Below, piece after piece: positions 25,201 through 43,634 of a DNA stretch of 64,000 bases (position 1 is the stretch's first letter; every line of letters starts with the position of its first letter). A program made the translations under genes and the position numbers. The notes beneath the pieces are model-generated. The model saw nothing but the letters and a program-made list of their open reading frames with translations, made no database searches and had not been told where the DNA came from. Source of the stretch: Adineta vaga (Eukaryota > Animalia > Rotifera); the NCBI GenBank assembly GCA_021613535.1, contig CP075496.1, positions 992,001 through 1,056,000 on the forward strand. Reading direction: 5' to 3'.

Positions 25201-28200
25201 ACATAGAAAGAAAGAGTAAATTCCCCCTAGTTTGAACGAATGGAAAGGGAATAGTTGAGTGATTTCTTTTTCTTTTTCTTCTTAATTCTTTTTTGTTTTG
25301 ATTGCCTATGAGAATATATTAATCTCTCATACAAGAAAATTAACATTTTTTAGAATAGTGACAGAAAGTATTTACCGGTAAATCATCAAGATCAAGTGTA
25401 TCCATAAATTTCGAATCCCAAGTCATATTTGAATCTGATGGTGCTGATTTAACTTTATTAATCATATTACCATTTTGTAATTCACTTTGAAGATTATCAC
25501 ATTTTTGTTCTAATCGATGCATTTCAATAACTAATCGCTGTCTTTGTTGTCTTTCTGCAGTTAATTCTTCTTCCAATTGTTTCATGCGTGTTGTTGATAA
25601 ATCTTGTGTTGATAAATCTCCACGTAGTTGTTCTTCTAATTTTTGAATATCTTTGTTTTTCTGTTCAATTTCATTTTCTAATTGCGTTATTAAATCGGTA
25701 TTTTTCAAAATAATTTCGTCTTTTGTTTGTTTAGTTTGAATTAAATCCGATCGAATCGATGAATTTTCGGTTTTTAAACGTTCATTTTCTAATCGAAGTC
25801 TAAAAAACACAACAAATTACTTATAGGAAAAGAAAAGTCAAATCTTACTGTTGAATTTCTTCTTCGAGATTCGTTTGTTTTTTCAAATTTTGTTTTAATT
25901 CTTTATTTTTCGTTTTTAATTGTTCAAAATCTTTTTTCAAATTCTCCAATTCTTGTTCTTTATTAGTTAAACGTTCATTATCACGTTTTTGTTCATCAAT
26001 TTTATGTTGTAAAGAAATAATTTTATTTTCTAAACCTTTATTCATTTGTTTTTGATGTTCAATTGAACGTTGTTCAACACGAAGTTTTTTCACTTCTTGA
26101 CAAGCTTCACGTCGACGTTGATGTGATTGTAAAAGAATAATTGCACGTTGAAATGTCACAAATCTTTGTCGAGCAATCCACATACGTATGGATGATTGAA
26201 GAACAAGAACACTTCGTTCTAACATTCTTTGTTGAAGATTTTTTCGAATTAAATAACCTCGACAATGTGATTGAATATCAATTAAAATAATTCGAAGTTT
26301 TTCAAAACGACGTGCTGCAATTTGTCGACGCCATAATGATTGAAATAATGTTACAGCACGTGTACGACGAATATCTTCGGCATGTTTTCTTGCTAAATAT
26401 CTTCGTGATAAACATTGTAATGCTAATGTTGTTCGTCGTATCTTTAAATAACGTTTACGTGCATAATAAGTTCGATAAGTTGTTTGAATTTTAATAATAC
26501 AAGCACGAAGTTTTTCCGAACGTAATTTTTCTAAATAAGCAACTTGTCCGGCACGAAAGAAGATTTTTGTATTGCCAAATTGATATTTATCAGGATCAGA
26601 AATAAGATTTTTTAGAATATTTTCACATGTTCGACGGTAATTCGTTCGATCAATCAATGCTGAACGTGTTAATAAACGATAACGAACAAAAAAATCATGA
26701 TAACTCCAACGTGATGGATAACCAGCAGCACTTATACGAACAGTTTCTAAAACACCACAAGCACGTAATTGTTGAACTGCACGACGAGGTTCAAATCTAT
26801 GAAGAAATTCAATTTTGATTAATTCAACAAAAACAAAGACAACTTACGTAAATGAAGCTTTAGCATCATTCGGTTTTATACAACGAACATAATGAGGTTC
26901 AGTCGAATTCAATGCAGTCATTAAACTTGTTAAAGATTCTCGAAACTATTGAGAGAAAAAAAATGAAATGAATCAATTGTATTAAAACAAAAAGATTTTC
27001 AGGATAAGAAGGATTTAAAGTGCTCTCAGACATAGAATGAAGGAATTCGTGTTTAGAAAAAACCAAACAAAGAGGATATACGAAAACCAACCTGTGAACC
27101 AAGTGAATATCTCTACAATGATTTTGTTTTCTTTATTAAACTTTCGAATTTATATGAATCGAAACATTCTTACTTGAGATCCCACAGTTTTCTTTCTTTG
27201 TGCTTGAGTTTTCGACGTCGCTTGTAAAGTTCCTGTTTTTTGTACTTGATAAGATTTCTTTGATGCTGCATTTTTCATCCCATCATCTTCTTCCATAAAT
27301 AATTGAACAACAAATTCGAACTAAATAAATTCTTATCGAAAAAACAAATAATTTCATTTCATTACGAAATCTTACTTCACTTTCTTTTAACATTTTTAAT
27401 TGATCTTCAAGAACGGTATCACGATTCTTTTCTAAAAATCCTTCAATAGAATATTCAACTTTTTCAGCGAAATGATTGATTATAAACGTTGTATGAGCTG
27501 TTAATTTTTTCGTAGAAAAATCCGCATGTTTCCCATGTTGAGTAACTAATTTTCTATGCCAATTTTCATCCGAACCTTTCGGCATCTATTAAAAAACTTT
27601 CTTTAGTTTGAACAAAAAAGAAAAAAGAAGATCAAGTTTCTCAAACAAACTTTGCATTCTTCATCTAATAAATCTAAGATTCCTAATTTATTTTCGATTA
27701 AATCAATACACGGTTGATTATCATAGAATTGAATAAATGACCAAGTGATTTCTTCTTTCATATATTCTTCTTGTTCAAGTTTAAACACATGCTAAAATAA
27801 AACAAAGAATATTCAAATTTTTTCGACAAAAAATTTTACCTGACAGAATTGTTGTTGTAATTTTTCATTGGCATAATTTATACAAAATTGTTCGAAACTA
27901 TTTATTTCAAATGTTTCAAAACTAAAATAAAATAAATTTCAAAAAAATAAAACAAAGTCTTTTTTTATTCAAACATTAAATTTACCCATAAATATCTAAA
28001 ACACCAATAAATGATTGTCGTTGTCCAATATATTCTAAAGATTTATTTATTTCATCAACAATCCATCCAAATAATTGCGAATAAATATGTTTTGCAAGAG
28101 CATCTCGAGCAAATAGCGCCTGAAAAAGAAACAGCTCATTTTCTTCTGAGAATATTCAAGATATTTCATTACTTGATTTAGAGTTAACGTTGTATTCACA

Positions 28201-30078
28201 ACTTCTACACCTGTTTTTATTCTCTTATTACATAACCATGTTCTCATTCGATTTTCATCCAATTTTAAAAGTGAACAAAATATTGAAAATGATTTATCCG
28301 ATTCTTTGACATACGATGTTTCACCTTCACCTTCATGAATAATGACATTTCCCAGATGGAGAATGGCTGATAATAAACGAAATATGGACAGTTGAACTTT
28401 ATTCTCAATACCTATTCAGAAGAAGAAAAAAAAGAAACACTAATAAAAGAAAACGAGTAATTCAAACAAACCAAGAAGAGTTAATGCTTCACGCGTTTCG
28501 AGGAATTGTTGAGCATCATTAACACCTTTGATTGTTATGGCATTTCCTTCAGATGTATAACGAAATTGATCAGCCGATACTAAATTTGATAGAGTAGTAT
28601 GAGTGAGGTTTCCTTATTTAGTGTCTCAAAAGTGATTGACTATTTTTTGTCACTTACATAAAGCAAGCGATTTCATTTCAGATTGATTCACTTGTGTACA
28701 TAATTGATAAAAGATATGATAATTTCTTTCATCTGGTGCTTGATAAATAACTCTAGAAAATGAAAAAACAACAACAACAATATGATTCTAAATATCTTTG
28801 AGAAAACAAACAAACCTTGATTTTTCTAATAAATAAGTTCTCATCGATGCACCACAAATATGATTTCTTAAAAAACCAATTTCAATATATTTTCCAAATC
28901 GTGATGAATTATCATTTCGTATTGTTTTCGCATTGCCAATTGCCTATGATTTCAATCACATCTATTCCTGTTCTTCTTTATTATTTCAAATAACTTACTT
29001 CCATAATTGGACTTGACGCTAAAACTTTCTTTTCAATTTGTGTTTCTTCTAATAAACCACCAACATTTGCAAAATATCTCATGGCATATTTTGCGCTAAC
29101 AGTTTTTCCTGCTCCTGATTCTCCTGAAACGATAATGGATTGATTTTTTGAGAAATTCACCATGGATTGATACGCTAATTCTGCTGTTGCAAATATATGT
29201 GGTTCTAATAGTTGAACATCTTGATCACGATACAATTGAATCGTATCATTGCCATATATAGATAAAGACTCATAGGGATTTATAGCCACTAAGACAATAC
29301 CACATTTTGTATAGATCTGAGATTTGTTAAAACGAGATTCAAGATTATATAAAACTAAATAAAAGAAATTGGGTTAGAAAAACTTTCGTACTTTGAGAAG
29401 AATTTACCTTCAGGTTCATTTAAATAAGAAAGTGCAGTAAGATCTTTTTGACCGATGAGAATCTCGGGATTACGCAATGGTGGAAGATCAGAATCGGATT
29501 TGATTGGAATAATTTCCTAATTATATTTCATTAATATTCAAAACTGTCTCGTTTTCTTCAACTTACATTTGCACCTTCTGCCGATATTACTTCTAGTTGT
29601 CCTTTACCATCATAATTACCCGCGACAGTCACGGCACGCCAAACATATTCACGATCTGGTAACCAAACTCGTGCACCCTGAAAAGAAACAAACAATCATC
29701 TTTTATTTCTTCACTTCTCAAAAAAACCAACAACATAAAGCAGCTTCCTTCTATTGCATTATTGTATCTTCACTATCTATGCAATAAAATCATGCAATAT
29801 CGACTAAATATAGCACAGCACACATGAAATATTCGCACAAACTATACAAACTTGAAAAGAATTGATTGACTCGACTAATAGAAAAGAAAAGAAATGAAGC
29901 AAACAACAACGAATATCAACTGAAATTTCATTCTTTCGAGAAAAATAAGAAAAAAACCTTAAGCATGAGATTAATATCTTCTTAGAACTGGAAATAGATG
30001 ACAACATTAATAAACAAGACAAGAATAAATCTGATTACAAAAACAACATACCTTTGTATATAATTCTCGAACAGACAT
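22227..30078 (-). CDS. MYO5: Unconventional myosin V (motor, IQ repeats, coiled coil, dilute domain), multi-exon
   Basis: Start MSVRELYTK|G; P-loop [26 protein letters not shown]; [21 protein letters not shown] and [16 protein letters not shown] motifs; IQ repeats; dilute-domain motifs; ends LHLDFLSLV*. Confidence 0.95.
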
Positions 30079-30260
30079 TATTTTAAATACATTTATATTG
30101 CCAAGACATCCAATGATTACAAACGATACGTCGAAACAATGACAGAGATTTTAATCTAGAAAATATCTAAGCTGTTTTTTTTTTCATTCAATACTATTTA
30201 TACAAAATATATCTGACGATTTTTATTCAAAGAAAATCACAGAGAATTGATTAACAAAGA

Positions 30261-30947
30261 TTATTTTTTTCTTTTTCTATTCATTGCATCATTAAGAACA
30301 TTGGTAAGATCATTTGTCATTCCTTGAATTTTAGGTGGTAACATTTGTTTTGTTTCATTATTAACTAGTCGATCATAATCTCGAAATGCTGCTTGTCCCA
30401 ATAATAATAAAATTTTCTCTTGTCTTTCAAATTTTCCTGTTTGTTGTTTCATACTTTCATGATGATGATGATCATTTGATATGACTAAATGAAAAGCTGC
30501 ATCCATTATTGAACGAAATCGTTGTTGATATGTTTGTAAAAGTGTAATGGCAACTTGTCGTTTTTCATCGAAATTTAATTCCAATAAATGACGTCCTTGA
30601 CGATAGAAATGTGGAGCTTGTTTAGCTAAATCAACAACTGTTGCATCAGCAGCAAAGATCTGTCGTTGAATACGTGAATAGATCAATGGTAGTTCAGGTA
30701 ATGTTGCAAATCGTGTTTTACAATTACAAATGGAATAAATCATCCAATAAGGAAGTTCAAGTTTCGTATTGGCTGTTAATGATGAAAGATTTTGTTCATG
30801 TTTCTGATCTTTTTTCTCATCATCTAATGCTGTTGATGAAGATGATGATTCGAGAAAACCTAATTTTGGTATATCGACAAGCAGTTGACAACGAATACGT
30901 TCTTGTGTTGATAAAATATCATCAATAGAGAAATAATCTTCATACAT
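30261..30947 (-). CDS. GINS3: DNA replication complex GINS subunit PSF3, copy 1 (intronless, 228 aa)
   Basis: MYEDYFSIDDILSTQERIRCQLLVDIPKLGFLE...KLELPYWM...ADATVVDLAKQAPHFYRQG...TYQQRFRSIMD is the Psf3 pattern. Confidence 0.9.
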   Translation of the reverse strand: MYEDYFSIDDILSTQERIRCQLLVDIPKLGFLESSSSSTALDDEKKDQKHEQNLSSLTANTKLELPYWMIYSICNCKTRFATLPELPLIYSRIQRQIFAADATVVDLAKQAPHFYRQGRHLLELNFDEKRQVAITLLQTYQQRFRSIMDAAFHLVISNDHHHHESMKQQTGKFERQEKILLLLGQAAFRDYDRLVNNETKQMLPPKIQGMTNDLTNVLNDAMNRKRKK

Positions 30948-31103
30948 CTGAAAAACAAAATCAAAAATGTTTTTTATGCGATAGATGAGTCTACTAGAAA
31001 TCTGACAACGGTGATGAATTATGTTTAACTCATCCGATATTTTCAATACATTCGAATGAAGAAGGATATGAATTAAGATAGACGTAATTTTCCTTCACTA
31101 TTA

Positions 31104-31647
31104 TTACTTACCTTCATTTGATTCATCGTCACTAGAAGAAGAATCGTCGCCACTATAAGAAGAATCATCGTCTTTGTCGACCTTTTCTACGATGTTGGAT
31201 GTTATGGATTCAGATAACCAATTGAAAAACATTCTTGTTGATTCAATTATTTCAATTTCATCTTTTTTTTCTTCTAGATTTAGTCTTCTTAACCAGTTCC
31301 AAAACATCTCTTCACTTACACAATCTTCATCATATAATATGTGGAACAGTTTACAAGCTAAACCTACAGGCAGACGAAGATCGTAAATGGACAAGGCTTT
31401 AATAATTAAAAATCTCTCACAACACTTTACCATGTGGATGTTTTAATTGAATTATAAATTTTTGTATGGCACACAGAACTTGAATTTCTTTTTCATTATC
31501 ATCATGAAGAATAGATTTTAACATACGAGCTCTATGTCGTGCGTTATCTTGATCAATTGCCATATCTATTGTATCAGAACCAATGAGACATGACTGTAAA
31601 TAAGATAATACAATAGTTTGTATGTAATGTTGATCGAATGGATTCAT
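31104..31647 (-). CDS. eIF4G-type W2 (HEAT-3) domain, two exons (intron 31364-31430); stand-alone or relic C-terminus of the HNH gene
   Basis: EKEIQVLCAIQKFIIQLKHPHG|LACKLFHILYDEDCVSEEMFWNW...IIESTRMFFNWLSES plus an acidic tail resembles the eIF4G AA-boxes (LYDEDVVKEDAFYSW...FFKWLREA). Confidence 0.7.
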
Positions 31648-31809
31648 TTTCTAAAATAAACAAAGATATCTTATAGGATCGAGAGTAGATTTAAGAATAT
31701 TTGCCTCGAGTATCTTTTCATTTATTCTGATAGAAATACATGATATTAAAGCTGCAAATGATAAACTACCAATCTCTATCAACGCGATGATCTTTTTCAA
31801 CTGATGCAT

Positions 31810-32925
31810 TCAGTATCGTATTGATTTCAGTACTGAATTAGAATTAGAATACAATGCACTTACTTCTCGAATATATTGTAAAAGTTTTTCTTCGTGTTTG
31901 TTCGAATCTATTGGTTGTTCATTGATCATTCTAAATAATTCAATCAAATTTGCTAAAGACGATGGTGTTGACTGTGGTAAAGGAACATCTTGTACAGTAG
32001 TAGTTGATGATAATGGACATACATCAACAACTTGTGTAAAAGATGTGAGAGATTTTGTAACTGTTAATGATGTTGTGCTTGATGTTTCCAATGGCATTTC
32101 TTGTCCAACAGGATTGTCCATGAGCCATTGATAAACATTCGCATGTGTATCTTTATCTGAACTTGTTCTAAATAAATCTTGAATAAAATTTGTTAAATTA
32201 AAAAAATCTGCATCATTTAATGAAAACTCTTTTTGTTTTTCCTTGGCTTTTTCGAAAGCACTATGACAATGTAATGCCAACATTCGACGATATGGTCGAT
32301 TATGATTTTGGAAAAGTAAAGGTGCTTGATGAATATTTCCGAAAGTATGAGGCGATACTGATGTAATTCTTTGTGACGATATTGTTTTATTTAGCAAAAA
32401 CATTTTTAATTGACTATTTTCTTCAATAATTGTTACATATTTTTTATCAAATGCATCTTTAATTGCTGTTACTAATCTCAAGCAATTTCTTGGATTATCA
32501 ATATTGGATGAACTTAAACCAAAATATTTTAAACCATATGATCTTGATTTTGGATATATATGTGCAGTCTTCACATGTTGAGCTTTTTTGTCAATAAGCC
32601 CGAGTATCATGCATTGATTTCTTTTTAAGTTGTAAAAGGTCATGACAGCTTCTCTCAACATTCTTCTTGTGTAGTGTGTGGAATGAGTTGACGATAAATC
32701 ACTCCATGGATCTGTTATTGTTTTGAGTAATTGATTATCAATATTTGGAACTAAATAAAAAGTAAAAAAATTATTATTAAATTATTTTTATTATTTTTAT
32801 TATTTACGTTGTTTGTGAAAGTTTTGAAGATGTCCGCATAAGCAAGTGTAATTTCCCGTGTTACAGAATGAAATACAAGGATTATCAGGATCTTTACATT
32901 TAAAACAAATATTTGTAAATGACAT
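31810..32925 (-). CDS. Cys/His finger + HNH endonuclease (HNH_2, Crinkler/CR-effector-like), 2 exons, ~352 aa
   Basis: Exon 1 (32808-32925) encodes MSFTNICFKCKDPDNPCISFCNTGNYTCLCGHLQNFH; 57-bp intron; exon 2 encodes CMILG...TAHIYPKS...IDNPRNCLRL...AFD...RPYRRMLALH. Confidence 0.8.
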
Positions 32926-33704
32926 GATTGATCTGAAAAAATCAAAATAGAAAATCATTTAACTAAATGAACTACAGTGCATAAGGACCTATGAATAATC
33001 CTGGATGTACAAGAGAAATATTTTATTTCCTTAACTAGGAATAATGGTAGAGCGATACCGCAATGAAATTCAACATATTCAGCGCAAAATGACCATAAAA
33101 AATCGAAAGATGTTTTCATATATGACACGAGAAGTTATCAGGAAATTAAAACAATATTATCTGAAAACAAATCATTATTATTTTCTAATTCGGCTTACTG
33201 ATGTATTCTATCATGACGATATTTTACAACTTAATCTCATAATTCTCGCAAAATTAGGACTACTCTTCATTGGCTATTTCAGTTCTTTCTTTAAAGTAAT
33301 TATTAACCTGAATCCTGAACAGAAACGAAACATAAAACAAAAGATTAACCTTTTTAATTCTTCTAATAAATTATAACGATTTATTACTAATGGTACATTT
33401 ATCATTGAAAATAGCCGAAATAAAGGTAGAAGACTAGTTTACCAGTTGTTTGTTTCGTTGGAGGATATGGTATTATAAAATAATCTCGTTCAAAGTGTAA
33501 AAACAGTGCTTGAAACGGAACTTCTCGAGTCACAAAAATAGTTTCATATTTAGAAAATCATGCATTATAAATGAAGCATAGCGTAACACACATAAGATAT
33601 TTATGTTTAAATGAGCTCGAAAATACTTTCTTAAATCAATCAAGATGCAAAACAGTGCACATCGTCGCAAATTAATTTTTATTATTAGAAAATGTTAAAT
33701 ATTC

Positions 33705-33745
33705 GACTAATACATATCTTTGAATATAAAATCTTGAACAGAAGT
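33705..33745 (-). pseudogene. Decayed copy of MYO5 exon 1
   Basis: acatatctttgaatataaaatcttgaacaga versus acatacctttgtatataattctcgaacaga (30046-30075), in the expected position downstream of PSF3 copy 2. Confidence 0.6.
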
Positions 33746-33946
33746 TTTTCTTCTTACTTATTCTGGATAATTAACCAAGCCGTTCATTGATCATAAAAAA
33801 ACGCGTCAGATGTACAAAACAATGACACATAATTATATCTACAAAATAATCAACAAGTTAATTTTTACTATTGCATCAAATTTTTCTACAAAATATATCT
33901 GACGATTTTTATTCGACGAAAATTACAGAGAATTGATTAACAAAGA

Positions 33947-34633
33947 TTATTTTTTCCTTTTTCTATTCATTGCATCATTAAGAACATTGGTAAGATCATT
34001 TGTCATTCCTTGAATTTTAGGTGGTAACATTTGTTTTGTTTCATTATTAACTAGTCGATCATAATCTCGAAATGCTGCTTGTCCCAATAATAATAAAATT
34101 TTCTCTTGTCTTTCAAATTTTCCTGTTTGTTGTTTCATACTTTCATGATGATGATGATCATTTGATATGACTAAATGAAAAGCTGCATCCATTATTGAAC
34201 GAAATCGTTGTTGATATGTTTGTAAAAGTGTAATGGCAACTTGTCGTTTTTCATCGAAATTTAATTCCAATAAATGACGTCCTTGACGATAGAAATGTGG
34301 AGCTTGTTTAGCTAAATCAACAACTGTTGCATCAGCAGCAAAGATCTGTCGTTGAATACGTGAATAGATCAATGGTAGTTCAGGTAATGTTGCAAATCGT
34401 GTTTTACAATTACAAATGGAATAAATCATCCAATAAGGAAGTTCAAGTTTCGTATTGGCTGTTAATGATGAAAGATTTTGTTCATGTTTCTGATCTTTTT
34501 TCTCATCATCTAATGCTGTTGATGATGATGATGATTCGAGAAAACCTAATTTTGGTATATCGACAAGCAGTTGACAACGAATACGTTCTTGTGTTGATAA
34601 AATATCATCAATAGAAAAATAATCTTCATACAT
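33947..34633 (-). CDS. GINS3: GINS subunit PSF3, copy 2 (same protein as copy 1)
   Basis: 687 bp, same length as copy 1; only ~3 synonymous differences seen by eye. Confidence 0.9.
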   Translation of the reverse strand: MYEDYFSIDDILSTQERIRCQLLVDIPKLGFLESSSSSTALDDEKKDQKHEQNLSSLTANTKLELPYWMIYSICNCKTRFATLPELPLIYSRIQRQIFAADATVVDLAKQAPHFYRQGRHLLELNFDEKRQVAITLLQTYQQRFRSIMDAAFHLVISNDHHHHESMKQQTGKFERQEKILLLLGQAAFRDYDRLVNNETKQMLPPKIQGMTNDLTNVLNDAMNRKRKK

Positions 34634-34666
34634 CTGAAAAACAAAAACAAAAACAAGTGTTTTATT
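34634..34666 (-). promoter_or_regulatory. Candidate intercistronic signal: AATAAA overlapping the NOM1 stop, T-rich tract, TTTCAG acceptor directly before the PSF3 ATG
   Basis: Minus strand reads GAA TAA aacacttgtttttgtttttgtttttcag ATG; the spacer is 28 bp. Confidence 0.65.
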
Positions 34667-37600
34667 CTTTTGATAGTTCATTAATGGCTATTTGACAACG
34701 ACGATGAACTAAATCAGAATAAATCGATTTCTTTGAAATAAAATGAGAAAGAAATAATCTGAGAGCATCTCTAACAAATTTATAATTTTTTGTTAATGGA
34801 AATTGAAAGATATTTTGTAACGATGCATCGTCGGTGTTTTCAAATAATTTCACAAACAATTCAACTAGAAATGTTCGTGCTGATGTTGTTAATTCGATGA
34901 AATTGAAATTCTATTAAAGAAAAAAAATGAAGAATTTATTTTAATTATATTATTCTTCACTCATATTCATAAAACTAAACGATCGACTATTGCCGAAAGT
35001 TATTCTATTCATTTGTAAAGTGTAACTTACTTTAAATATATTCAATGTAATTGATTTTGATATTAATAATTGTGATAATACTGTACCAAAATTTGCTAAT
35101 TGGTGATCATTGAGTAATGAAAGATCTTTAAATCGATCCCATGTATGATATTGTAAGGACATCTAAAGAATTTTATGAGAAAATAGGGTTTTTTTTCTTC
35201 AGAAGAAATGTCTTTACTTGAAAACGACGATCATATGCAGCGAATCGTTGTAAAATCAGTGTATAATATGGATTATAGGTTTTTTCATGTAAAGAACAAT
35301 GAATTGTAACCTTGATTGTAAATAAAAACAATCATAAAATTAAATAGAAAATGACACTTACATGAATGATTTCTCGTTCTTGAATTTTATTTAAATTCAA
35401 TTTATGAAGTTTTTCCACTGCATCATCACAATCCTATATAAGAAGAAAAATCAGATATATGTATATATAAAATATTCATTTATTCAATTCAATCATTTTC
35501 ATAACAATATTCTCTCGAGAAGAAAAACTTATTTTTAGTCTCATATAACAAGCTGAAGGACGAATTCCACACGTTTTTATAATAGAAAAATAAACCCTAA
35601 ATACTTCTTTCTTTTCATCAATAGAAAGAGAACAGTACAACGGCTTTTTTCTCCAGCAAGGATATATCCTCGTTTCCTTTTCCTATTCTATCGTTTTATT
35701 TATTATCTACTTTGTATTTATTTGTTTTCATTGTGTCAATACAACAAGTGCATTAGTCTCTGACGTTCATTCTCTTTCTTCTCATATACTGAGTAGTCTT
35801 TAAAGTACTAAGTTTCAATAATACAATGCAATTGAACTAGAGATATATCAAACCCGCGTCTCTCATTCTTTTTCTGATTTGTCTTCTTTATTTTATTCAA
35901 ATTTTATAAAATCTATGTGAATAATATCGAATTACCTCACTTGTCAATAATGTTCCAAATATTAATCGTCTAATATCCGTATTCATATGTTGTTGTTTTG
36001 CTAATTTTCGAATATTTTCATTAAATAATGGTTCAGTTTTATCTTTTTTATTCTTTTGTTTATCTTGAGAATTTTGTTTTTGCCATGCAGAACCAACGAT
36101 CCACCATCGTCCTTGTTCTTTAGCATTTAGAAAATCTTCTAATCCAACATTTAACATATTTGCTTGTTGTACTGTTTTATCTTTAACTAAATTTCGATAA
36201 ATTTTTCTCAATCGATCAATTCGATCTGGTTCAAATCCACCGGGTAATTTTCTAACGTCATTATTTTTCAAACTTTTAATTGTATCCATCATAAATTCTA
36301 ATCGTTTTGATGATGATGATATTAATGTTGATGATGAACATATCGTGCGTAGTTCTTGAAGGAAATTCTTCAATTCTAGTGGATTATCTTTTCGTAAAAA
36401 GAATCCACTGGTTTTTAATAATAGAAGAATTAATTCTAAACGTTTTTCATTGATTTGTTCAATAGTTAATATGTATCGAGCAAGATCAAATAGAATTTTT
36501 CCATTGATCATAGAAAATGCATATGTATACGCAAAAAATTGAATTAAATTATCCGGAATTTTGTTTGAAACATCATCATGAATATGTTCGACGAAAAGTT
36601 GTAAGAAATTTTCGAGTAAATATGATCCTATTTCTAAACCAATATTAGCATGAAGAAGACAAGCAAGTAATGCATATTCAGCAAGAAAATTTTCACCAGT
36701 TAAAGAAAGAGATGATATAAGACTATCATGATATAATTGATATAAACATAAATTAACTGTTGCACGAGATTGAGTTCGATAAATTGTTTCAATTTCAATT
36801 AAAATTGAAGATAAATTCTTTTCACTTAAACGATTTATTTGACCTTGAAGACGACGTTTTAATTCAAGTAAAGAATTATCATCAGATGTATTCAATTTTT
36901 GTCGAAGTGCAGGAGGAATGTACGTTGTACCTAAAATCATTCAATTCAATATCAAATTTCAAATCTTTCACATGAAGTACTCTCTTATTTTTATATTTTA
37001 AATAGTATTCATTTAGTTCTGTAGAAAATTTCAAAGCAGAACTTTAGATACAACAATTAGCTCGAAAGATTAAAAAGAAAACCAAAGTTATAGTCAAAAT
37101 ACTAAGACCGTTATTTATTCTGCTGCACTCATTATGTCTTTCATAAAATTGAATTGTTTTTATAAGAAAACATATTCTTACTTGAATTACTTTTGACAAC
37201 ATTGCCCTTCGTATCAACTGTTCGTCCATAAATATCTTCTTTTAACGTTGGAGTCTCTTCTTCATCTTCTCCTCTTTCTCCATCTTCTTCCCCATCTCCA
37301 TCTTCGTCTTCGTCAAAATCTTCTTCATCGAAATCTTCGTCTTCATCATCATCATCATCAATCATTTTCGTTTGAATATCTTCATTGAATTTCACTAACG
37401 ATGTTTTTTTCTTTGAAATTTTCTCTTCAGATTTCTCCTTATCATTCGCTAATTTAACTTTTTCTTTTTGTTTTTTTGCTAACCATTGTTGATCTTCATC
37501 TTCTTCATCATACCAAGCATTTCCTTCTCCATCACCTAAACAAAACAAACGAAAGATTATAAAAACAAATAAATCGTCATTTACCTTCAGCCTGCATAAT

Positions 37601-38116
37601 TTCTTTTCTTCGATCTTTATCACAAAAATCGAGTAAGAAATCCAAACCATCATCGACAAAACCACGTAAATATGTTTTCCGATTCGATTTAATTCCTAAA
37701 AGTTTTTCTAATTTTTTAATATGACCATCTTCCATTTCATTATCTTCTAATAAATGTCTTCGATGATGTTCTTTCGCAGCCTATTGAAATACAAATCGAA
37801 ACAACAACAAAAAATATTTTCAATTCAAACCTGTTCATCAACTGTTAATTCTTCTGAATCATCTTTTGATTCTTTCTTCTTTTTCTTTTTCTTCTTTTTC
37901 TTCTTATTCGAATTTTCCTCTTGCTCAAATGAAGGTGCTAATGCATCGATAGATTTTGGTATCTAAATAGAAAATATTTGATTGAAAAGTTCAATATAAA
38001 GAAGAAGAACGAACTTGATCTCGATGATGCCATGCATTTCGTTTAGCTTTAACTAATTTTCTTTCTAATTGTCGACGTTGTTTTCTTGGAAGAAGAGTAT
38101 TTTGGTTTTCTTTCAT
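34662..38116 (-). CDS. NOM1: Nucleolar MIF4G domain-containing protein 1 (NOM1/Sgd1), multi-exon
   Basis: Basic N-terminus MKENQNTLLPRKQRRQLERKL, acidic tract, EDIYGR, YIPPALR, MIF4G (LQGQINRLSEKN), GRWWIVGSAW and the MA3 start MNTDIRRLIF. Confidence 0.9.
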
Positions 38117-38192
38117 CTAAAATAGATTTTATTTATTATTTAAGACAAAAATATTCTACATAAATCATCCAACTATTTCATCTGGTTCAAGT
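38117..38192 (-). promoter_or_regulatory. Duplicated PLEKHA8 3' tail + 48-bp spacer with AATAAA and TTTTAG acceptor abutting the NOM1 ATG
   Basis: Minus strand reads ...GAA ATA GTT GGA TGA tttatgtagaatatttttgtcttaaataataaataaaatctattttag ATG; nearly identical to 41432-41510. Confidence 0.7.
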
Positions 38193-38204
38193 TTATGAAT
38201 GATA

Positions 38205-38938
38205 ACCAGATCGAGATGAACAATTGGTAAACTCGTTCCGAACAAAAGAACGAATAAAAGCATGTTCTAAACGTATTCGCAACGCGTTCTATAGACGTTC
38301 GATAGATGCCGTCCGTTCGGAACGCATTTTGTGTTATTTTTTTCTTCTTTCGACAGGTCGAGAATATGACACGATAATGACAAATATATAAATTAAAAGT
38401 ATATATGAAAGAATTAAATGATGGTATAATTCAAAAAATATTTTTATTTCAGATAAATTATAGCTTAATCATTTTTAGTCTTAGTTGTGTACATTTAGAT
38501 TGGATTTAATTTGTGAATGAATCGATTATCGTTTACATCATCATGTGATCGAAATGCTACGTCATTTTTTACCAGTATTCTTTGCTGATAGGTATTTTAT
38601 ACTATGACCAATATACCTGTAAGTGAAACTTTTTTTCTCTTATGTTTATCTTTAGAAAGGAATATGTCGTTTTTTTCTTGTATTTAATTGTAATCTTAAA
38701 CTAAAATCGTCATTTTTTTGTAATGCGAACTTCTTAGAATTGTATCTCGTATTTTTGTCTTTCTCTATATCGTAGATGTGTTCATGATTATTATCATGAG
38801 TTTTGTCAATTTAAATTATTTGTATGACTCATGTTCCAATTAAATCTGAATAAACCAACTAAAGGGTTCTGCACTATTTTAAGAACGTGTTCGAAACAAA
38901 TATCGAACGCATTTTTTCATCGTTCGTCTCGACCTGAG
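38205..38938. mobile_element. Degenerate MITE-like element (CAGGTCGAG-type TIRs)
   Basis: ccagatcgagatgaacaattg versus the reverse complement of catcgttcgtctcgacctga; subterminal gaacg/cgttc repeats. Confidence 0.45.
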
Positions 38939-38997
38939 ATATGATTTATCTATTGCACTTACAGAAACTTTTTGTGCATATTTAATGATATATTCGA

Positions 38998-40324
38998 TTA
39001 TTTCTTTTGTCTTTTGTTCACAAACTTTTTCAATATTAAAATGTTCATCGTTGATTGTGATTGAACACTACTAATATCTGTACCAGGTACTTCACCAATG
39101 AGTTTCCAAACAGGAGTAGAAAAACGATTGACTATTTCGAGTACACATGATATTCTAAACAGAACAGAGAAACAATCAATAAAGAATGAAGGAAGTGAAA
39201 CGAACGACATACCCATTTCAAATATTATCGAGATTTAAAATTTGCTGTTTCTGTGCTAAATCAAATAAATGTCCTACGAAAGCAGCTGTTTGTGGTTCTA
39301 ATTTCAAAACATTTATTATTAGTTCACTGACGAGTATACAGTTTGATCCAGTAAGAGAACATTAGATAAATCTTGAACAGCTACCTAAATAATAATATTA
39401 AAAAAACGAAAAATGTTGCAAAATCATATTTTTATACGAACTTTTATGCGATTACTGATGGATATATGGGATGAATATTCAGTATATTGTCCGATAAACG
39501 CATAAATAAATGTTGATGTTGTTTTTGATTGTGCTAATTGTGTGTCAAGTCCAATTGGATTATTATTTAACTATTGTTTAACATTTTCACGTTTATGTGC
39601 ATCCAATGATATACCTAATATATGGTCGACATAAAATCTGAAATTACCCAGGTCTTCATTACTTAATAAAAACTCTTGTCATTTCAGTCTTGCATAATTA
39701 AATGAACTGTAACATTGTAGAGCCAAAGGCGATGAAAAGGTCGTTGTTCATTATTAAAATTTAACGATACTCCATGAATACTTCCAAACGTATGAAGAGA
39801 GACCGATGTAATTTGCTTCGATAAAAGTGTTCTGTTTAATAATTCACCATTTTTCTCGATTATGGTTAAATTATTTTGTTGATTGAACGCAAGAACCATA
39901 CATCGATTTTTGTCCAAATTGTAGAAATTCATTACGATCCAGGACAATGATTTCGGCAGCTGTATCCGTGCAATTCCGACAGGAACCTGCAGGAAAATGA
40001 AAGCAGGAATGAACGGATCCTGTGACCAGTTTTGCTCGGTTCCTTCCGGTTCCGAAGAAAGCTGAATGAATCCTACGACCGGATCTGGCCCGCACTTCTC
40101 GACATGGGGGATTCTCGCAATGTTTTTCAACAAGTGACGAAATGTACTTTGATATAAACAAAGAAAAAAGCAAATATATGATACAACTTTCTTTTCAACT
40201 TATTTTCACAATGAAGATTCTTTTTGTGCCTACACAAGCATATATAATTACCAACGTCGCAGAAAGTAAAGCCTGTTTCTTTAGCATTAATATACTCGTA
40301 ACAAATATTGATAGACTCCGTCAT
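38998..40324 (-). pseudogene. Second, decayed copy of the finger-HNH gene, with eIF4G-type MA3 exons
   Basis: MTESINICYEY...FCDVGNYICLCRH matches exon 1 of the intact copy. VMNFYNLDKNRCMVL..TIIEKNG..SKQITSVSLHTFGSIH..RPFHRL matches exon 2, with the AHI/N core deleted. Downstream exons AVQDL...VGHLFDLAQKQQILN..NG|ISCVLEIVN...PVWKLIGEV resemble eIF4G MA3. Frameshifts and stops present. Confidence 0.75.
39938..40108. mobile_element. GC-rich MITE-like insertion in the HNH pseudogene
   Basis: Abrupt GC-rich block absent from the intact paralog. Its ends ccaggac.../...cgacatggg and ggatcc/tccg-rich interior resemble the 19300-19536 MITE. Confidence 0.5.
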
Positions 40325-40949
40325 TTATCTGAAAAAATTAAAATAGACAATATCATTAAACAAAATGAATTATGCAAAGAATATAAAAATAAATCATTTC
40401 TAAATAAGAACAATTGTAACAATTGTGTAACAAGACGATAATGAGAGAAAAGAATTACTGCAGAGTATTTACAACGATCAATAAAAATCCAACTCATCTG
40501 CACGACAATGACGAGTATTAGGAAACACAACACAAGCAATATTATTTGAAAAAAGAAACGAGAAATTTAGTTACTATCATTCCATTATCATTTGTTGATT
40601 CAGATTGCAAACGTATCTGATCACGAGGGTATTTTCGTTTTTTGTTTCATTGGAGGATATTGTGTCATATAATGAATTGGCTTAAATTGGGATAATAATG
40701 CTGAAGGCAGAGTTTATTGGGTAATGATTGATGACTGAATATGAAACCTTTCATTATACTTTAAATCACAAAAATTGAAAAGATTTCTCACAGATTCTCG
40801 TAAATTTGACTAAATATACATCACTAAATCTTGATATTTGTTAGGATTCATCAGCACTAAAAAGTCTGATTTTTCACCTTGCACTCATTTGAACATAACT
40901 TATATGATTTTAGGTGAAGTTTTATCGAAAAGACGTGAATGAGAAAATG

Positions 40950-41431
40950 TTTTCTTACTTGAATTAGTTTTGACAACGTTGCCGTTAGCATCAACTGTTC
41001 GTCCATAAATATTTTCTTTTAATATTGACGTTTCTTCTTCATCATACCAAGCAATTCCTCGTCCATCACCTATTTTAAATACAAAAAAAAATTCAGATTA
41101 AGTAATCTAAATTCTATTTCATTACCTTCTGCATGTGAAATTTCTTTTCTTCGATCTTTATCACAAAAATTCAATAAAGAATCTAACACATCATCAATAA
41201 AATCACGTAAGTATGTTTTACAAACTGGTTTAATTCCTAAAAGTTTCTCTAATTTTTTAATATTTGCATCTTCAATGATGTTCTTTCACTGCCTAACCTA
41301 ACATCAGTTTCTGAAGAAAAAAATCAAACTTTTTTTTGTTCATGCCATGCATTTCGTTTCGCTTTATCTAATTTTCTTTCTAATTGTCGACGTTGTTTTC
41401 TCAAAAGAAGAATATTTTGATTTTCTTTCGT
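40950..41431 (-). pseudogene. Decayed copy of the NOM1 5' exons (start mutated to ACG, internal deletions, stop)
   Basis: Colinear with 37170-38116 (catcaactgttcgtccataaatat; tttcttttcttcgatctttatcacaaaa; ttttctttctaattgtcgacgttgttttc). Confidence 0.85.
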
Positions 41432-41481
41432 CTAAAATAGATTTTATTTATTATTTAAGACATAAAAATATTCTACATAAA

Positions 41482-43634
41482 TCATCCAACTATTTCATCT
41501 GATTCAAGTTCATTTTCGAGATAAAATTCTGTTATTTTATGTACAAGATTATTAATATAAGAACTATGTTCGAGCATTTCATGTAAAATCTAAAAGAATA
41601 AAAATAAAAAATATTGTTTGGTTAAGAAACAAGTCATTTACTTGTTGTTCGAAAAGAACTTCTCGTGCATCATTTGAATCAACTGAAAGTGATACAAGAA
41701 AATCTTCATTGTATGGAACTGATCGAAGGGCAATCTAAAATGATTATATGAATTTAGAGTTTAGATGAAAAAAGAAAAGATTTACGGAAAATGCGCCGCG
41801 TGTGATCCATCCATGATAACGTTTTAATGTTTGTCCATATGCTTTGTTCATTGCATCTTCAACACTTCGATCACCTTGACCGAATTCATGAAGAAAACAA
41901 GATAAAAATGCAATACTCCTAAAATCAAGATGAATTATCTTAAGGAAATTCAGAGTTTGTCATAAGAGATCAGATTTCAATTCCTTGTAATTCAATAGGC
42001 AACTCTTATAACAAGATCAATCTTTTTCAATTGATAAATTGCTTCTTTTTGTTCAAATAGAAGATTTCACGCGAAAAAAATAAGTCATACTGGTCTTTAT
42101 AAATTACTGTCCAATTTGATTTCTCTCTCCTCTTCTAAAATTGATGATTCTAAATGAAATGTTACGAATAAATACCTTTTTAGCCAAAGAAGTGCATCAG
42201 TTGCTGAATTTTTTTCTTTTGTGGTTTTTGCGTTTATTTCATCATTCAAAATTGAAAATAATGTTTGGAATTTATTTGGATCATTACTAATTTTTCTTCG
42301 TAATTTCTATTCAAATCAAATGTCAATCTTTATTTCAAGATAAAGTACAACTTACGCTAATATTTCCATTAGCATCTGCACGTAGTGGAGTGAATGTTGT
42401 ACTATTAAATTTGTCTAGAAATGAATTTGTTATTGAAAAGTTTGAAAAACCAAAGAATTGATATACCGATAAGAGTAAGATATTGTTCACATGTTGAAAG
42501 AAAAAGTTCAGAATGAATATCTTTGAATGGTAAACAACTCAACTGGGCGAATCTAAAATCAATTCAAATTAGAAAAAGAAGTTAAATATCATTTAAATTA
42601 CGTGAATGGAAGTTGAGTAAAGAATGTCTTATAAACAATTTGTTTTGGTAAAAATGTTGTTGTTGTTGGTAAATTCGATGATCTAGAAGAGAAAGAAATA
42701 TATAATCTTCAATAAATTTAACAAGTATTAATCAACACAAACATAGGTGTTTCAAATTCATTAAAAGATTTTCGAAGTATTGTTGTCCCATCAGGGAGTT
42801 TTGGTGGAGATGGAGAAAGTAGAAGTAACGATTGAGATGAATCACCAGTTGCTAATTTAACACATTCATCAAGTGTATGAATAAATGCATCGCATGTAAC
42901 ACTTAACATTGACGAGGATTCATCTAATTTCTTGACGATAAAACGACAAACAAAATTATTTTCATGAAAAAAAAGACCCTAAAATAAATATACTTTAACA
43001 TCTGGAATAGGCGTATCATTTGCTATTGATTTAATTGCATGAATACCTTGAGTAAGAACTGTTTCGTAAAGACGTAATTCTTGTACTTTAATTTTAAGTT
43101 CACGATCAATTGCAGTTAGATGTGAAACTAGAAACAAAGTCAAATGAAACTATGTCAAATGAGAGAATATTAATTTACTTAATGTTGATGATGTATTTGT
43201 ATTATTATGATTACTGTTTGAATTAGATGTTGTAGTTGATTTTGTTCCACGAGATTTACATGTACCCAAAGAAACAAGCCAACGTTGCCGTTCAGGTTGA
43301 GATTTTGCTTTCAAACAAAAAAATTGTTCACCTGGAATAATCAAATCGAAACGAAGGGGATCATTTGGATGAGCTAAATTCATACAAAATTATATTCATT
43401 TATTTATTCTATGCAAATTTTATCAACCTTTCACTTCACAAGCAAGTACTAAACATGAACCTTTACATCCTTCATGAATCAATTCCTTTGATTTATAATA
43501 TGAAAGAACACCTGTTTCATTCAAAACAAAATAACGTGGTTGCCATCCTGAAAAGAAAAGTTTTATTAAACATTGTTATAATGAATTATTTTACCATTAT
43601 AATAATTAGTCCATTTATAAAGTATACCCTCCAT
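41482..43634 (-). CDS. PLEKHA8: PH + GLTP domain protein FAPP2/PLEKHA8, multi-exon
   Basis: MEGILYKWTNYYNG|WQPRYFVL..GVLSYY (FAPP PH domain), ERQRWLVSLGTCK, and GLTP motifs ATDALLWLKR and AYGQTLKRYHGWI; ends ELESDEIVG*. Confidence 0.9.

What the first reader, a model, noticed from the sequence alone, without database searches (positions are those of the whole stretch)
30078..43634. Candidate trans-spliced operon PLEKHA8-NOM1-PSF3-MYO5
Seen: the NOM1 stop is 28 bp from the PSF3 ATG, with AATAAA overlapping the stop and TTTCAG directly before ATG. The PLEKHA8 stop is 48-50 bp from the NOM1 start, with AATAAA then TTTTAG directly before ATG. The PSF3 stop is 182 bp from the MYO5 ATG, with a tttctag acceptor at ~30157-30163. 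PSF3 and NOM1 N-termini look complete, so these acceptors have no obvious coding donor exon, and there is no room for promoters. Established: spliced-leader trans-splicing occurs in bdelloid rotifers, and operons resolved this way occur in nematodes and tunicates. Inference: polycistronic transcription in which 3'-end formation and the trans-splice site nearly coincide.
Basis: partly seen in the sequence, partly recalled or inferred. Interest (0 to 1): 0.8.

Follow-up and report, generated by a model that had tools for sequence, protein, structure and literature searches.

The report
Interrupted spliced-leader operon candidate, rotifer
Four unrelated housekeeping genes of a bdelloid rotifer lie head to tail with tiny gaps that end in splice acceptors, a layout kept across bdelloids and typical of a spliced-leader operon. 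In this genome copy two inserted nuclease-gene cassettes interrupt the row, and two of the supposed trans-splice sites are used for ordinary cis-splicing.

Summary
The quoted spacers are real: 28 nt NOM1-to-PSF3, 48-50 nt PLEKHA8-to-NOM1 and 182 nt PSF3-to-MYO5, each ending in a pyrimidine-rich AG. The row is not four contiguous genes, though. PLEKHA8 ends at 41482, next to a dead NOM1 5' fragment. Then comes a decayed HNH cassette, and only 77 nt of the old junction is repeated before the one intact NOM1. PSF3 occurs twice with identical proteins, on either side of an intact HNH-MA3-W2 gene.

Relatives lack the cassettes. They keep GLTP/PLEKHA8 > NOM1 > PSF3 > MYO5 with the same poly(A)-signal-plus-acceptor junctions. 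The genome holds about 59 spliced-leader (SL) RNA gene copies.

The RNA data were assembled contigs only.
- They confirm NOM1 splicing.
- They show acceptor 32932 joined in cis to an exon at 33758.
- By exact length arithmetic, they show the W2 exon cis-spliced onto the second PSF3's acceptor, so that pair is co-transcribed.

SL joined at 38116 or 34633 was not shown, because the tool masked 34629-34662.

Verdict: the ancestral cluster is a good, conserved SL-operon candidate (about 0.55). A single PLEKHA8-to-MYO5 transcript in this haplotype is unproven. This scan holds 36 notes matching the words spliced leader, operon and trans-splicing; the eight shown are operon candidates in this genome. 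The papers I could search report no rotifer operons.

The parts
41482..43634 (-). PLEKHA8-like gene (PH + GLTP), first gene of the ancestral cluster. ATG at 43634, stop TGA at 41484-41482.
   Evidence: Sequence. GLTP Pfam hits on exons 42306-42100 and 41959-41747. The last exon is conserved in relatives.
40939..41481 (-). Ancestral PLEKHA8-to-NOM1 spacer (50 nt, aataataaataaa...ttttag), followed by a decayed NOM1 5' fragment with ACG in place of ATG at 41431.
   Evidence: Direct repeats D2-D4, 82-87% identical to NOM1 exons 1-4. Sequence.
38194..40324 (-). Degenerate HNH-type cassette and unrelated filler between the NOM1 fragment and the intact NOM1.
   Evidence: Weak matches with stop codons to the intact HNH exon at window 39469-39875. 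Sequence.
38117..38193 (-). Duplicated 77 nt: the last ~25 nt of PLEKHA8 coding sequence, its stop, and a 48-nt spacer with poly(A) signal and ttttag acceptor.
   Evidence: 89% to the upstream copy.
34662..38116 (-). NOM1 (MIF4G + MA3), 9 exons, the only intact copy in the assembly.
   Evidence: Eight GT..AG joints in RNA contigs from 3-4 studies. MIF4G Pfam hit. Single copy.
34634..34661 (-). 28-nt NOM1-to-PSF3 spacer. AATAAA overlaps the NOM1 stop and tttttcag lies directly before the PSF3 ATG.
   Evidence: Conserved layout in relatives. Masked by read laying, so not tested with RNA.
33947..34633 (-). PSF3/GINS3 copy 1 (228 aa, no intron).
   Evidence: Homologues carry PF22466/PF05916.
33758..33840 (-). 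5' exon (at least 83 nt) lying just downstream of PSF3 copy 1. It is cis-spliced (GT donor after 33758) to acceptor 32932.
   Evidence: Joint 32932/33758 with CT..AC ends, run X3, depth 4.6, side 83.
31104..32932 (-). HNH-MA3-W2 cassette gene. Exons 32932-32808, 32750-31864, 31650-31431 and 31363-31112. ATG at 32925. Unspliced stop at 31106-31104.
   Evidence: HNH_2 and W2 Pfam hits. Canonical splice sites. Contig length arithmetic.
30261..30947 (-). PSF3/GINS3 copy 2. The protein is identical to copy 1, with 3 synonymous differences. Its acceptor (cag|ATG) is joined in cis to the W2 exon donor at 31112.
   Evidence: X12 contig of 2258 nt = 1484 (four HNH-gene exons) + 774 (30947-30174).
30079..30260 (-). 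PSF3-to-MYO5 spacer. It holds AATAAA...TCAGATA, an RNA contig end at about 30174, the conserved ttttctag acceptor (AG at 30157-30156), and a 77-nt leader.
   Evidence: Elements conserved in relatives.
22230..30078 (-). MYO5 (class V myosin), last gene of the cluster. The lower end is approximate.
   Evidence: Myosin_head Pfam hit. Open frames. Annotation in relatives: Myosin_head, IQ, DIL.

Best explanation
PLEKHA8(GLTP) > NOM1 > PSF3/GINS3 > MYO5 is an ancestral bdelloid gene cluster built like a spliced-leader operon.

Proposed mechanism (inferred): one primary transcript runs through several genes. The upstream message is cleaved and polyadenylated at a signal that overlaps or closely follows its stop codon. 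The 22-nt rotifer spliced leader is then trans-spliced onto a pyrimidine-AG acceptor that lies at, or within about 80 nt of, the next start codon. At the first two junctions 3' end formation and the acceptor nearly coincide, as in sea-squirt-type operons.

State in the assembled Adineta vaga-type haplotype (shown): an HNH-nuclease cassette has entered the cluster twice, each time with a duplication of the host junction. The older event left a dead NOM1 5' fragment beside PLEKHA8 and moved the working NOM1 3.3 kb downstream. The younger event duplicated PSF3.

The cassette gene uses host signals. Its first coding exon is cis-spliced from an exon just past PSF3 copy 1. Its last donor is cis-spliced onto PSF3 copy 2's acceptor, which turns what was probably an outron into an intron and yields a two-gene mature RNA.

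Shown: the layout, its conservation, SL genes, NOM1 splicing, and the two cis joints (one by arithmetic). Inferred: SL addition at these sites and transcription from a shared upstream promoter.
For: 1. Spacers and signals are as read.
2. About 59 copies of TGCTTATTACAACTTACCAAGAG lie in this genome against 0 for the reversed control. In the six loci read, each copy is followed by GTAAAT.
3. Same order, same strand and tiny gaps occur in relatives without any cassette. L016 has gene ends/starts 1982|2061, 7732|7770 and 8453|8686. L010-L015, L020, L021, L024 and L027-L033 agree. The order is also kept in Didymodactylos, where annotators fused PLEKHA8 with NOM1.
4. Junction motifs are conserved while the rest of each spacer drifts.
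5. NOM1 is single-copy and is expressed and spliced. It keeps only 77 nt of ancestral upstream DNA, so its expression cannot depend on a promoter inside PLEKHA8.
6. The X12 contig of 2258 nt at depth 36.8 equals exactly exons 125+887+220+252 plus 30947-30174. Coverage at the same depth spans exactly 32808-32932. So the HNH gene and PSF3 copy 2 lie on one RNA.
7. An X12 contig at depth 78.8 runs from spliced NOM1 exons 3-1 through the unspliced acceptor and spacer into the PLEKHA8 last exon.
8. The PSF3 copy 2 contig ends about 17 nt before the conserved MYO5 acceptor.
9. From bin arithmetic, X15 contigs end exactly 2 nt (AG) above acceptors 38116 and 32932. That is where SL-joined and genomic forms would diverge. 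This is a weak hint.
Against: - No loose end shown by read laying is the SL. Only assembled contigs were available, 11 loose ends were not displayed, and 34629-34662 was masked. This is absence of a test, not a negative result.
- A scan of metagenome contigs for SL joined to the PSF3 start found nothing.
- The PLEKHA8-to-NOM1 bridging contig could be an assembly path through a 32-nt word shared by the two junction copies. Its G variant is absent from the assembly.
- Coverage upstream of NOM1 (38200-38700) is low and only 95-97% identical.
- Two acceptors are used in cis.
- The cassette's 5' exon may mark a cassette-borne promoter. If so, neither NOM1 nor PSF3 copy 2 need be driven from PLEKHA8 today.
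- In Didymodactylos the NOM1-to-PSF3 and PSF3-to-MYO5 gaps are 5.6 and 2.8 kb.
Confidence: 0.55

Rival explanations
1. Each gene is its own transcription unit. Compact promoters sit in the spacer or in the 3' end of the upstream gene. The acceptors serve ordinary, non-operonic SL trans-splicing that trims short outrons. The close packing only reflects a compact genome.
For: More than half of bdelloid mRNAs were reported to carry the SL, without any report of operons (PMC1925144 citing Pouchkina-Stantcheva and Tunnacliffe 2005; PMC7986045). In Didymodactylos PSF3 also has cag|ATG although it lies 5.6 kb from NOM1. No polycistronic molecule across an ancestral junction is proven.
Against: A 28-nt spacer made of a poly(A) signal and a pyrimidine tract leaves no room for a promoter. 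NOM1 still works with only 77 nt of ancestral upstream sequence. PSF3 copy 2, with 13-27 nt retained, is transcribed together with the gene upstream of it. Order and spacing are conserved across bdelloid lineages.
Confidence: 0.25
2. The acceptors are mainly cis-splice sites. Read-through transcripts are spliced from upstream donors into the next gene, giving conjoined or chimeric mRNAs or 5'-UTR exons. The SL plays little part at this locus.
For: Joint 33758 to 32932 with GT..AG in run X3. The W2 donor 31112 is joined to the PSF3 copy 2 acceptor, by exact contig arithmetic in X12.
Against: Both cis events use donors supplied by the inserted cassette. The ancestral junctions have no GT donor exon between the upstream stop and the acceptor. 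The W2-PSF3 joint puts PSF3 out of frame behind a long upstream reading frame, so it cannot be the normal way of making PSF3. No cis joint into 38116 or 34633 appeared among the joints listed.
Confidence: 0.12
3. The row is a product of the local duplications or of mis-assembly, and the short spacers carry no regulatory meaning.
For: Two segmental duplications lie inside the region. An RNA contig carries a PLEKHA8 variant that is absent from the haploid assembly.
Against: The same order and junctions occur in independent assemblies and metagenome contigs of other bdelloids that lack the duplications.
Confidence: 0.03

Closest known systems
Ciona / Oikopleura (tunicate) SL operons
   Same: Unrelated housekeeping genes lie on one strand. 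There is essentially no intercistronic region: the upstream poly(A) signal overlaps the stop and the acceptor follows 25-50 nt later. A single SL type is used. (The tunicate features are from my own knowledge and from PMC1488885 as listed.)
   Different: SL addition and a polycistronic precursor are not demonstrated here. The PSF3-to-MYO5 junction has a 182-nt gap with a 77-nt leader.
Caenorhabditis elegans operons (SL2-resolved)
   Same: A same-strand cluster with a poly(A) signal about 100 nt from the downstream acceptor (the PSF3-to-MYO5 junction). Downstream genes appear to lack promoters.
   Different: No specialised SL2-like leader was identified, only one SL family with minor variants. 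No U-rich intercistronic element was tested.
Chaetognath operons (Paraspadella gotoi, PMC12460157)
   Same: The nearest phylum (Gnathifera) with SL trans-splicing and operons defined as genes less than 250 bp apart with SL evidence. There is no operon-specific leader.
   Different: That work has genome-wide read evidence. For rotifers, the papers I could search give none. PMC7986045 states that operons were not reported in rotifers.
Outron-to-intron conversion / conjoined read-through genes
   Same: A donor placed upstream of a trans-splice acceptor makes it a cis acceptor (shown in C. elegans experiments; my own knowledge). Here the cassette's W2 donor is joined to PSF3 copy 2's acceptor.
   Different: This would be a natural case caused by an insertion. 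The product carries two reading frames that overlap as AUGUAUGA, and whether PSF3 is translated from it is unknown.

Membership tests
SL trans-spliced operon (metazoan) | Two or more genes on the same strand with very short intergenic distances | tested here: met
   Gaps are 28, 48-50 and 182 nt. In this haplotype the row is interrupted by about 3.3 kb and about 3.0 kb of cassette.
SL trans-spliced operon (metazoan) | SL RNA genes present in the genome, with a donor site after the leader | tested here: met
   59 matches against 0 for the control. The leader is followed by GTAAAT.
SL trans-spliced operon (metazoan) | SL found joined to the 5' end of the downstream genes at the predicted acceptors | tested here: inconclusive
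   Only assembled contigs were available, 34629-34662 was masked, and no SL loose end was displayed. Contig ends 2 nt above two acceptors are only a hint. The metagenome scan gave 0 hits.
SL trans-spliced operon (metazoan) | An RNA precursor spanning two or more genes | tested here: inconclusive
   Met for the derived pair, HNH gene plus PSF3 copy 2, by the 2258-nt contig arithmetic. The PLEKHA8-to-NOM1 bridging contig is ambiguous because of a shared 32-nt word. The NOM1-to-PSF3 junction was masked.
SL trans-spliced operon (metazoan) | The upstream gene's 3' end forms next to the downstream acceptor | tested here: inconclusive
   AATAAA overlaps the NOM1 stop 25 nt before the acceptor (sequence). 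The PSF3 copy 2 contig ends about 17 nt before the MYO5 acceptor. Contigs cannot show true poly(A) sites.
SL trans-spliced operon (metazoan) | Downstream genes lack their own promoter or transcription start | not testable with these tools
   Indirect only: NOM1 functions with 77 nt of ancestral upstream DNA.
SL trans-spliced operon (metazoan) | The cluster is conserved among related species | tested here: met
   Order and junction motifs are kept in at least 9 distinct bdelloid sequences. The order is also kept in Didymodactylos.
C. elegans-type SL2 operon | A specialised second leader for downstream genes | not tested
   One leader family was found, with single-base variants such as ...TTAAAAC... 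in about 9 copies. Their use is unknown.

The most novel reading that the evidence does not exclude
A nuclease-gene cassette has twice inserted into a rotifer operon by duplicating the host junction, and it is expressed by borrowing the operon's splice signals. Its last donor captures the trans-splice acceptor of GINS3/PSF3. The resulting mature bicistronic mRNA has the upstream stop overlapping the PSF3 start (AUGUAUGA). PSF3 copy 2 would then be made either by termination-reinitiation or by competition between cis- and SL trans-splicing at one acceptor. This would be a natural outron-to-intron switch, and evidence that operon-internal genes are portable units without promoters.
Probability: 0.2. 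Interest if true: 0.75.

Novelty: new member of a known kind. Interest (0 to 1): 0.55.

Why it matters
SL-resolved operons are known in nematodes, tunicates, flatworms and chaetognaths. For rotifers, the papers I could search report trans-splicing only, and one of them (PMC7986045, 2021) states that operons were not reported.

This cluster is conserved across bdelloids and has junctions where the poly(A) signal and the acceptor nearly coincide. That adds a testable case to a genome-wide pattern this scan keeps meeting.

The locus also offers a natural experiment. Two cassette insertions separated essential genes from everything upstream except a few dozen bases, and the genes are still expressed. 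That bears directly on whether operon-internal genes need their own promoters, and on how cis- and trans-splicing compete for one acceptor.

Tried and rejected
- The X12 loose end at 38117 (205 nt) looked like an upstream exon. It is a chance 17-nt match to a gene 4.7 Mb away on the same chromosome, so I rejected it.
- An exact-protein look-up of this window's PSF3 found nothing on record.
- I hoped the short contigs of PSF3 relatives (856-1724 nt) were mRNAs with an SL. All carry NOM1 introns or the unspliced spacer, so they are DNA.
- A metagenome scan for the SL 3' half joined to the PSF3 start gave 0 hits.
- Rfam found nothing in the window.
- The original rotifer SL paper (doi 10.1093/molbev/msi139) is not held. 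The leader sequence came from my memory and was then checked against this genome.
- I read the PLEKHA8-to-NOM1 bridging contig first as proof of a cassette-free haplotype. I downgraded it after finding that the two junction copies share a 32-nt word, which allows a graph path between them.
- Read laying could be called only once. The stretch 32700-38700 left 30078-32700 unlaid, and the tool masked the NOM1-to-PSF3 spacer.
- Spliced models were never joined for a search. All family and genome searches were done exon by exon, by reference.

Full report
**What the window is.** The window is G000:C4:992001-1056000 of a 100.8-Mb, six-contig assembly. It is AT-rich, about 30% G+C. Earlier notes of this scan name the organism as the bdelloid rotifer Adineta vaga. 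I did not verify the name independently. Every close protein relative is a bdelloid, or an environmental contig that resembles one. All genes discussed lie on the minus strand.

**Checking the observation.** The three spacers exist as quoted.
- NOM1 ends with TAA at 34664-34662 inside gAATAAAa. After 28 T-rich bases comes tttttcag|ATG of PSF3 at 34633.
- A TGA at 38167-38165 is followed by 48 bases (…aataataaataaaatctattttag) and then NOM1's ATG at 38116.
- A PSF3 stop at 30263-30261 lies 182 bases before the MYO5 ATG at 30078. A ttttctag ends at 30156.

Exon-by-exon Pfam scans confirm GLTP (PLEKHA8-like), MIF4G (NOM1) and Myosin_head. PSF3 homologues carry PF22466/PF05916. All searches used single exons by reference.

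**The row is not four contiguous genes.** Direct repeats and the sequence show two nested duplications.

*First duplication.* The real last exon of PLEKHA8 ends at 41484-41482. Its 50-nt spacer leads into a decayed copy of NOM1 exons 1-4, which has ACG for ATG at 41431 and is 82-87% identical. A degenerate HNH-type gene follows (matches with stop codons at 39469-39875), then filler. Only then come 77 duplicated bases (38193-38117), made of the last ~25 coding bases of PLEKHA8, its stop and the spacer. These 77 bases precede the intact NOM1. That NOM1 is the only copy in the assembly.

*Second duplication.* PSF3 occurs twice, at 34633-33947 and 30947-30261. The products are identical 228-aa proteins with three synonymous differences. 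Between the copies lies an intact gene with HNH_2 and W2 domains. Upstream of copy 2 only 13-27 bases of the old spacer remain. Relatives have no cassette, so both insertions are specific to this lineage. The NOM1 event is the older one.

**Conservation.** I used PSF3 homologues to fetch contigs.

| Locus | What it shows |
|---|---|
| L016 (assembly labelled Rotaria sordida) | GLTP > MIF4G/MA3 > PSF3 > myosin V, with gene ends/starts 1982\|2061, 7732\|7770 and 8453\|8686 |
| L010-L015, L020, L021, L024, L027-L033 | Same order |
| Didymodactylos carnosus | Order kept. Annotators fused PLEKHA8 and NOM1 into one model. NOM1-to-PSF3 and PSF3-to-MYO5 are 5.6 and 2.8 kb |

The junction motifs persist while the rest of each spacer drifts.
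- *NOM1 to PSF3:* stop, then 20-45 T-rich bases, then CAG|ATG.
- *PLEKHA8 to NOM1:* stop, then a poly(A) signal and T-tract, then TTTYAG within 50-75 bases.
- *PSF3 to MYO5:* AATAAA…TCAGATA, then TTTCTAG 25-70 bases further on, then a leader of roughly 20-110 bases.

All of these contigs contain introns, so they are DNA and give no RNA evidence.

**The leader.** I recalled the 23-nt bdelloid leader from memory. It matches the genome 59 times (as TGCTTATTACAACTTACCAAGAG and single-base variants) against 0 for the reversed control. In the six loci I read, each copy is followed by GTAAAT, as expected of SL RNA genes. PMC1925144 cites the original report that more than half of bdelloid mRNAs carry this 23-nt exon.

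**RNA evidence.** All of it comes and is limited. All four were Logan contigs. They are spliced, so they derive from RNA.

*(a) NOM1 splicing.* Eight GT..AG joints define the nine NOM1 exons. They are reproduced in three or four runs.

*(b) A cis joint at 32932.* In X3 (depth 4.6) a joint links 33758 to 32932 with GT..AG ends.

*(c) The W2 exon joined to PSF3 copy 2.* X12 record 1 is 2258 nt at depth 36.8.
- Its positions 24-769 align to 33883-34628 and carry copy-2 letters at 33956 and 34526.
- The depth bins at 32700-33101 (17 and 5.86) equal 36.8 × 93/201 and 36.8 × 32/201. That is exactly 32808-32932 at the same depth.
- The four HNH-gene exons with canonical splice sites sum to 125+887+220+252 = 1484 nt. 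The span 30947-30174 is 774 nt. The total is 2258 nt.

I therefore infer that this contig is exons 1-4 of the HNH gene spliced from donor 31112|gtaagt directly onto PSF3 copy 2's acceptor. The inference rests on arithmetic because the letters themselves were not shown. In that RNA the upstream frame would end …N-E-D-V-stop, with a UGA 3 nt after PSF3's AUG (AUGUAUGA).

*(d) A contig bridging PLEKHA8 and NOM1.* An X12 contig at depth 78.8 carries NOM1 exons 3, 2 and 1 spliced together. It continues through the unspliced acceptor and spacer, with an AT insertion typical of the upstream junction copy. It then runs at least 255 nt into the PLEKHA8 last exon, and the bin arithmetic fits 38127-38193. 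One letter of its PLEKHA8 part is absent from the assembly. The contig is either the second haplotype without a cassette, or a graph path through the 32-nt word that the two junction copies share. It does at least show RNA that contains the unspliced NOM1 acceptor.

*(e) No SL seen.* No displayed loose end is the SL. However, 11 loose ends were not shown, contig assembly tends to clip 22-nt tips, and the tool masked 34629-34662, which is the whole NOM1-to-PSF3 spacer. By bin arithmetic, X15 contigs end at 38118 and 32934, two bases (AG) above the acceptors. That is where SL-joined (…GAG) and genomic (…YAG) forms would diverge. I treat this as a hint only.

*(f) A false lead.* The loose end at 38117 in X12 was a chance 17-nt match.

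**Interpretation.** The ancestral cluster has every sequence-level property of an SL operon, and it is conserved. The two insertions serve as a natural experiment. NOM1 is essential by inference, single-copy and expressed, yet it works with only 77 ancestral bases upstream. PSF3 copy 2 retains 13-27 bases and is transcribed on the same RNA as the gene in front of it. Both facts argue that these genes depend on transcription arriving from upstream plus an acceptor, and not on promoters inside the preceding gene.

The evidence does not show SL addition at these sites. It does not show a molecule spanning an ancestral junction. It does not show that PLEKHA8's promoter drives the row today. The cassette's own 5' exon (33840-33758) may mark a cassette promoter.

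I put the operon reading of the ancestral cluster at about 0.55. Independent units with short outrons get 0.25. Mainly cis read-through splicing gets 0.12.

**Comparison and novelty.** The first two junctions resemble tunicate operons, which have no intercistronic region. The third resembles the roughly 100-nt nematode spacing. Chaetognaths, the nearest phylum with documented operons, also lack an operon-specific leader (PMC12460157). PMC7986045 (2021) states that operons had not been reported in rotifers. My searches for Adineta or rotifer operons found no such report.

This scan holds 36 notes matching the words spliced leader, operon and trans-splicing. The eight shown are operon candidates elsewhere in this genome, and some follow-ups claim SL-joined RNA. 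I did not test those claims, and they are not independent support. I file this locus as a new member of a known kind. What it adds is the cassette-made natural experiment and the cis capture of a probable trans-splice acceptor.

Noticed in passing
window 30040-41512 (cassettes at 40324-38194 and 33882-31104): An HNH_2-domain gene, fused to MA3/W2-like exons in the intact copy, sits twice in the cluster. Each time it lies between direct duplications of the host junction. The assembly holds only one intact copy and one decayed copy, plus two weak matches elsewhere, so it is not a prolific transposon. The scan has also noted it separately.
   Followed up: partly
window 39960-40140: A G+C-rich stretch of about 180 bp (ccccatgtcgagaagtgcgggccagatccgg...) interrupts the decayed HNH gene. 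It looks like a small secondary insertion.
   Followed up: no
window 30207-30225, 33893-33911; L010, L016, L020, L021, L024, L027: The PSF3 3' UTR keeps AATAAA followed 5-12 nt later by TCAGATA in every bdelloid relative seen, including a G+C-rich one. Its function is unknown. It could be a cleavage or processing element.
   Followed up: no
G000 C1, C2, C4, C5, C6; L003-L008: Many SL RNA genes occur as divergent pairs with leaders about 154 bp apart, and in clusters on C5 (9.88-9.93 Mb and 10.91-10.93 Mb). About 9 copies carry a C-to-A variant (…TTAAAAC…). This might be a second leader type.
   Followed up: no
L017:1-78: A second assembly labelled Rotaria sordida has a PSF3 contig that keeps only about 35 nt of the usual spacer. 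The bases before that are unrelated to NOM1. This may be a parallel rearrangement breaking just upstream of the acceptor, or it may be an effect of the contig end.
   Followed up: no
window 38200-38700: RNA contigs from three studies match here at only 95-97% identity and low depth. That suggests a repeated element transcribed from other copies.
   Followed up: no
window 34513-34535: A (TCA)n run in PSF3 attracts chimeric contig ends and false joints (for example 34534 to 36672) in the contig data. Depth figures there are unreliable.
   Followed up: partly
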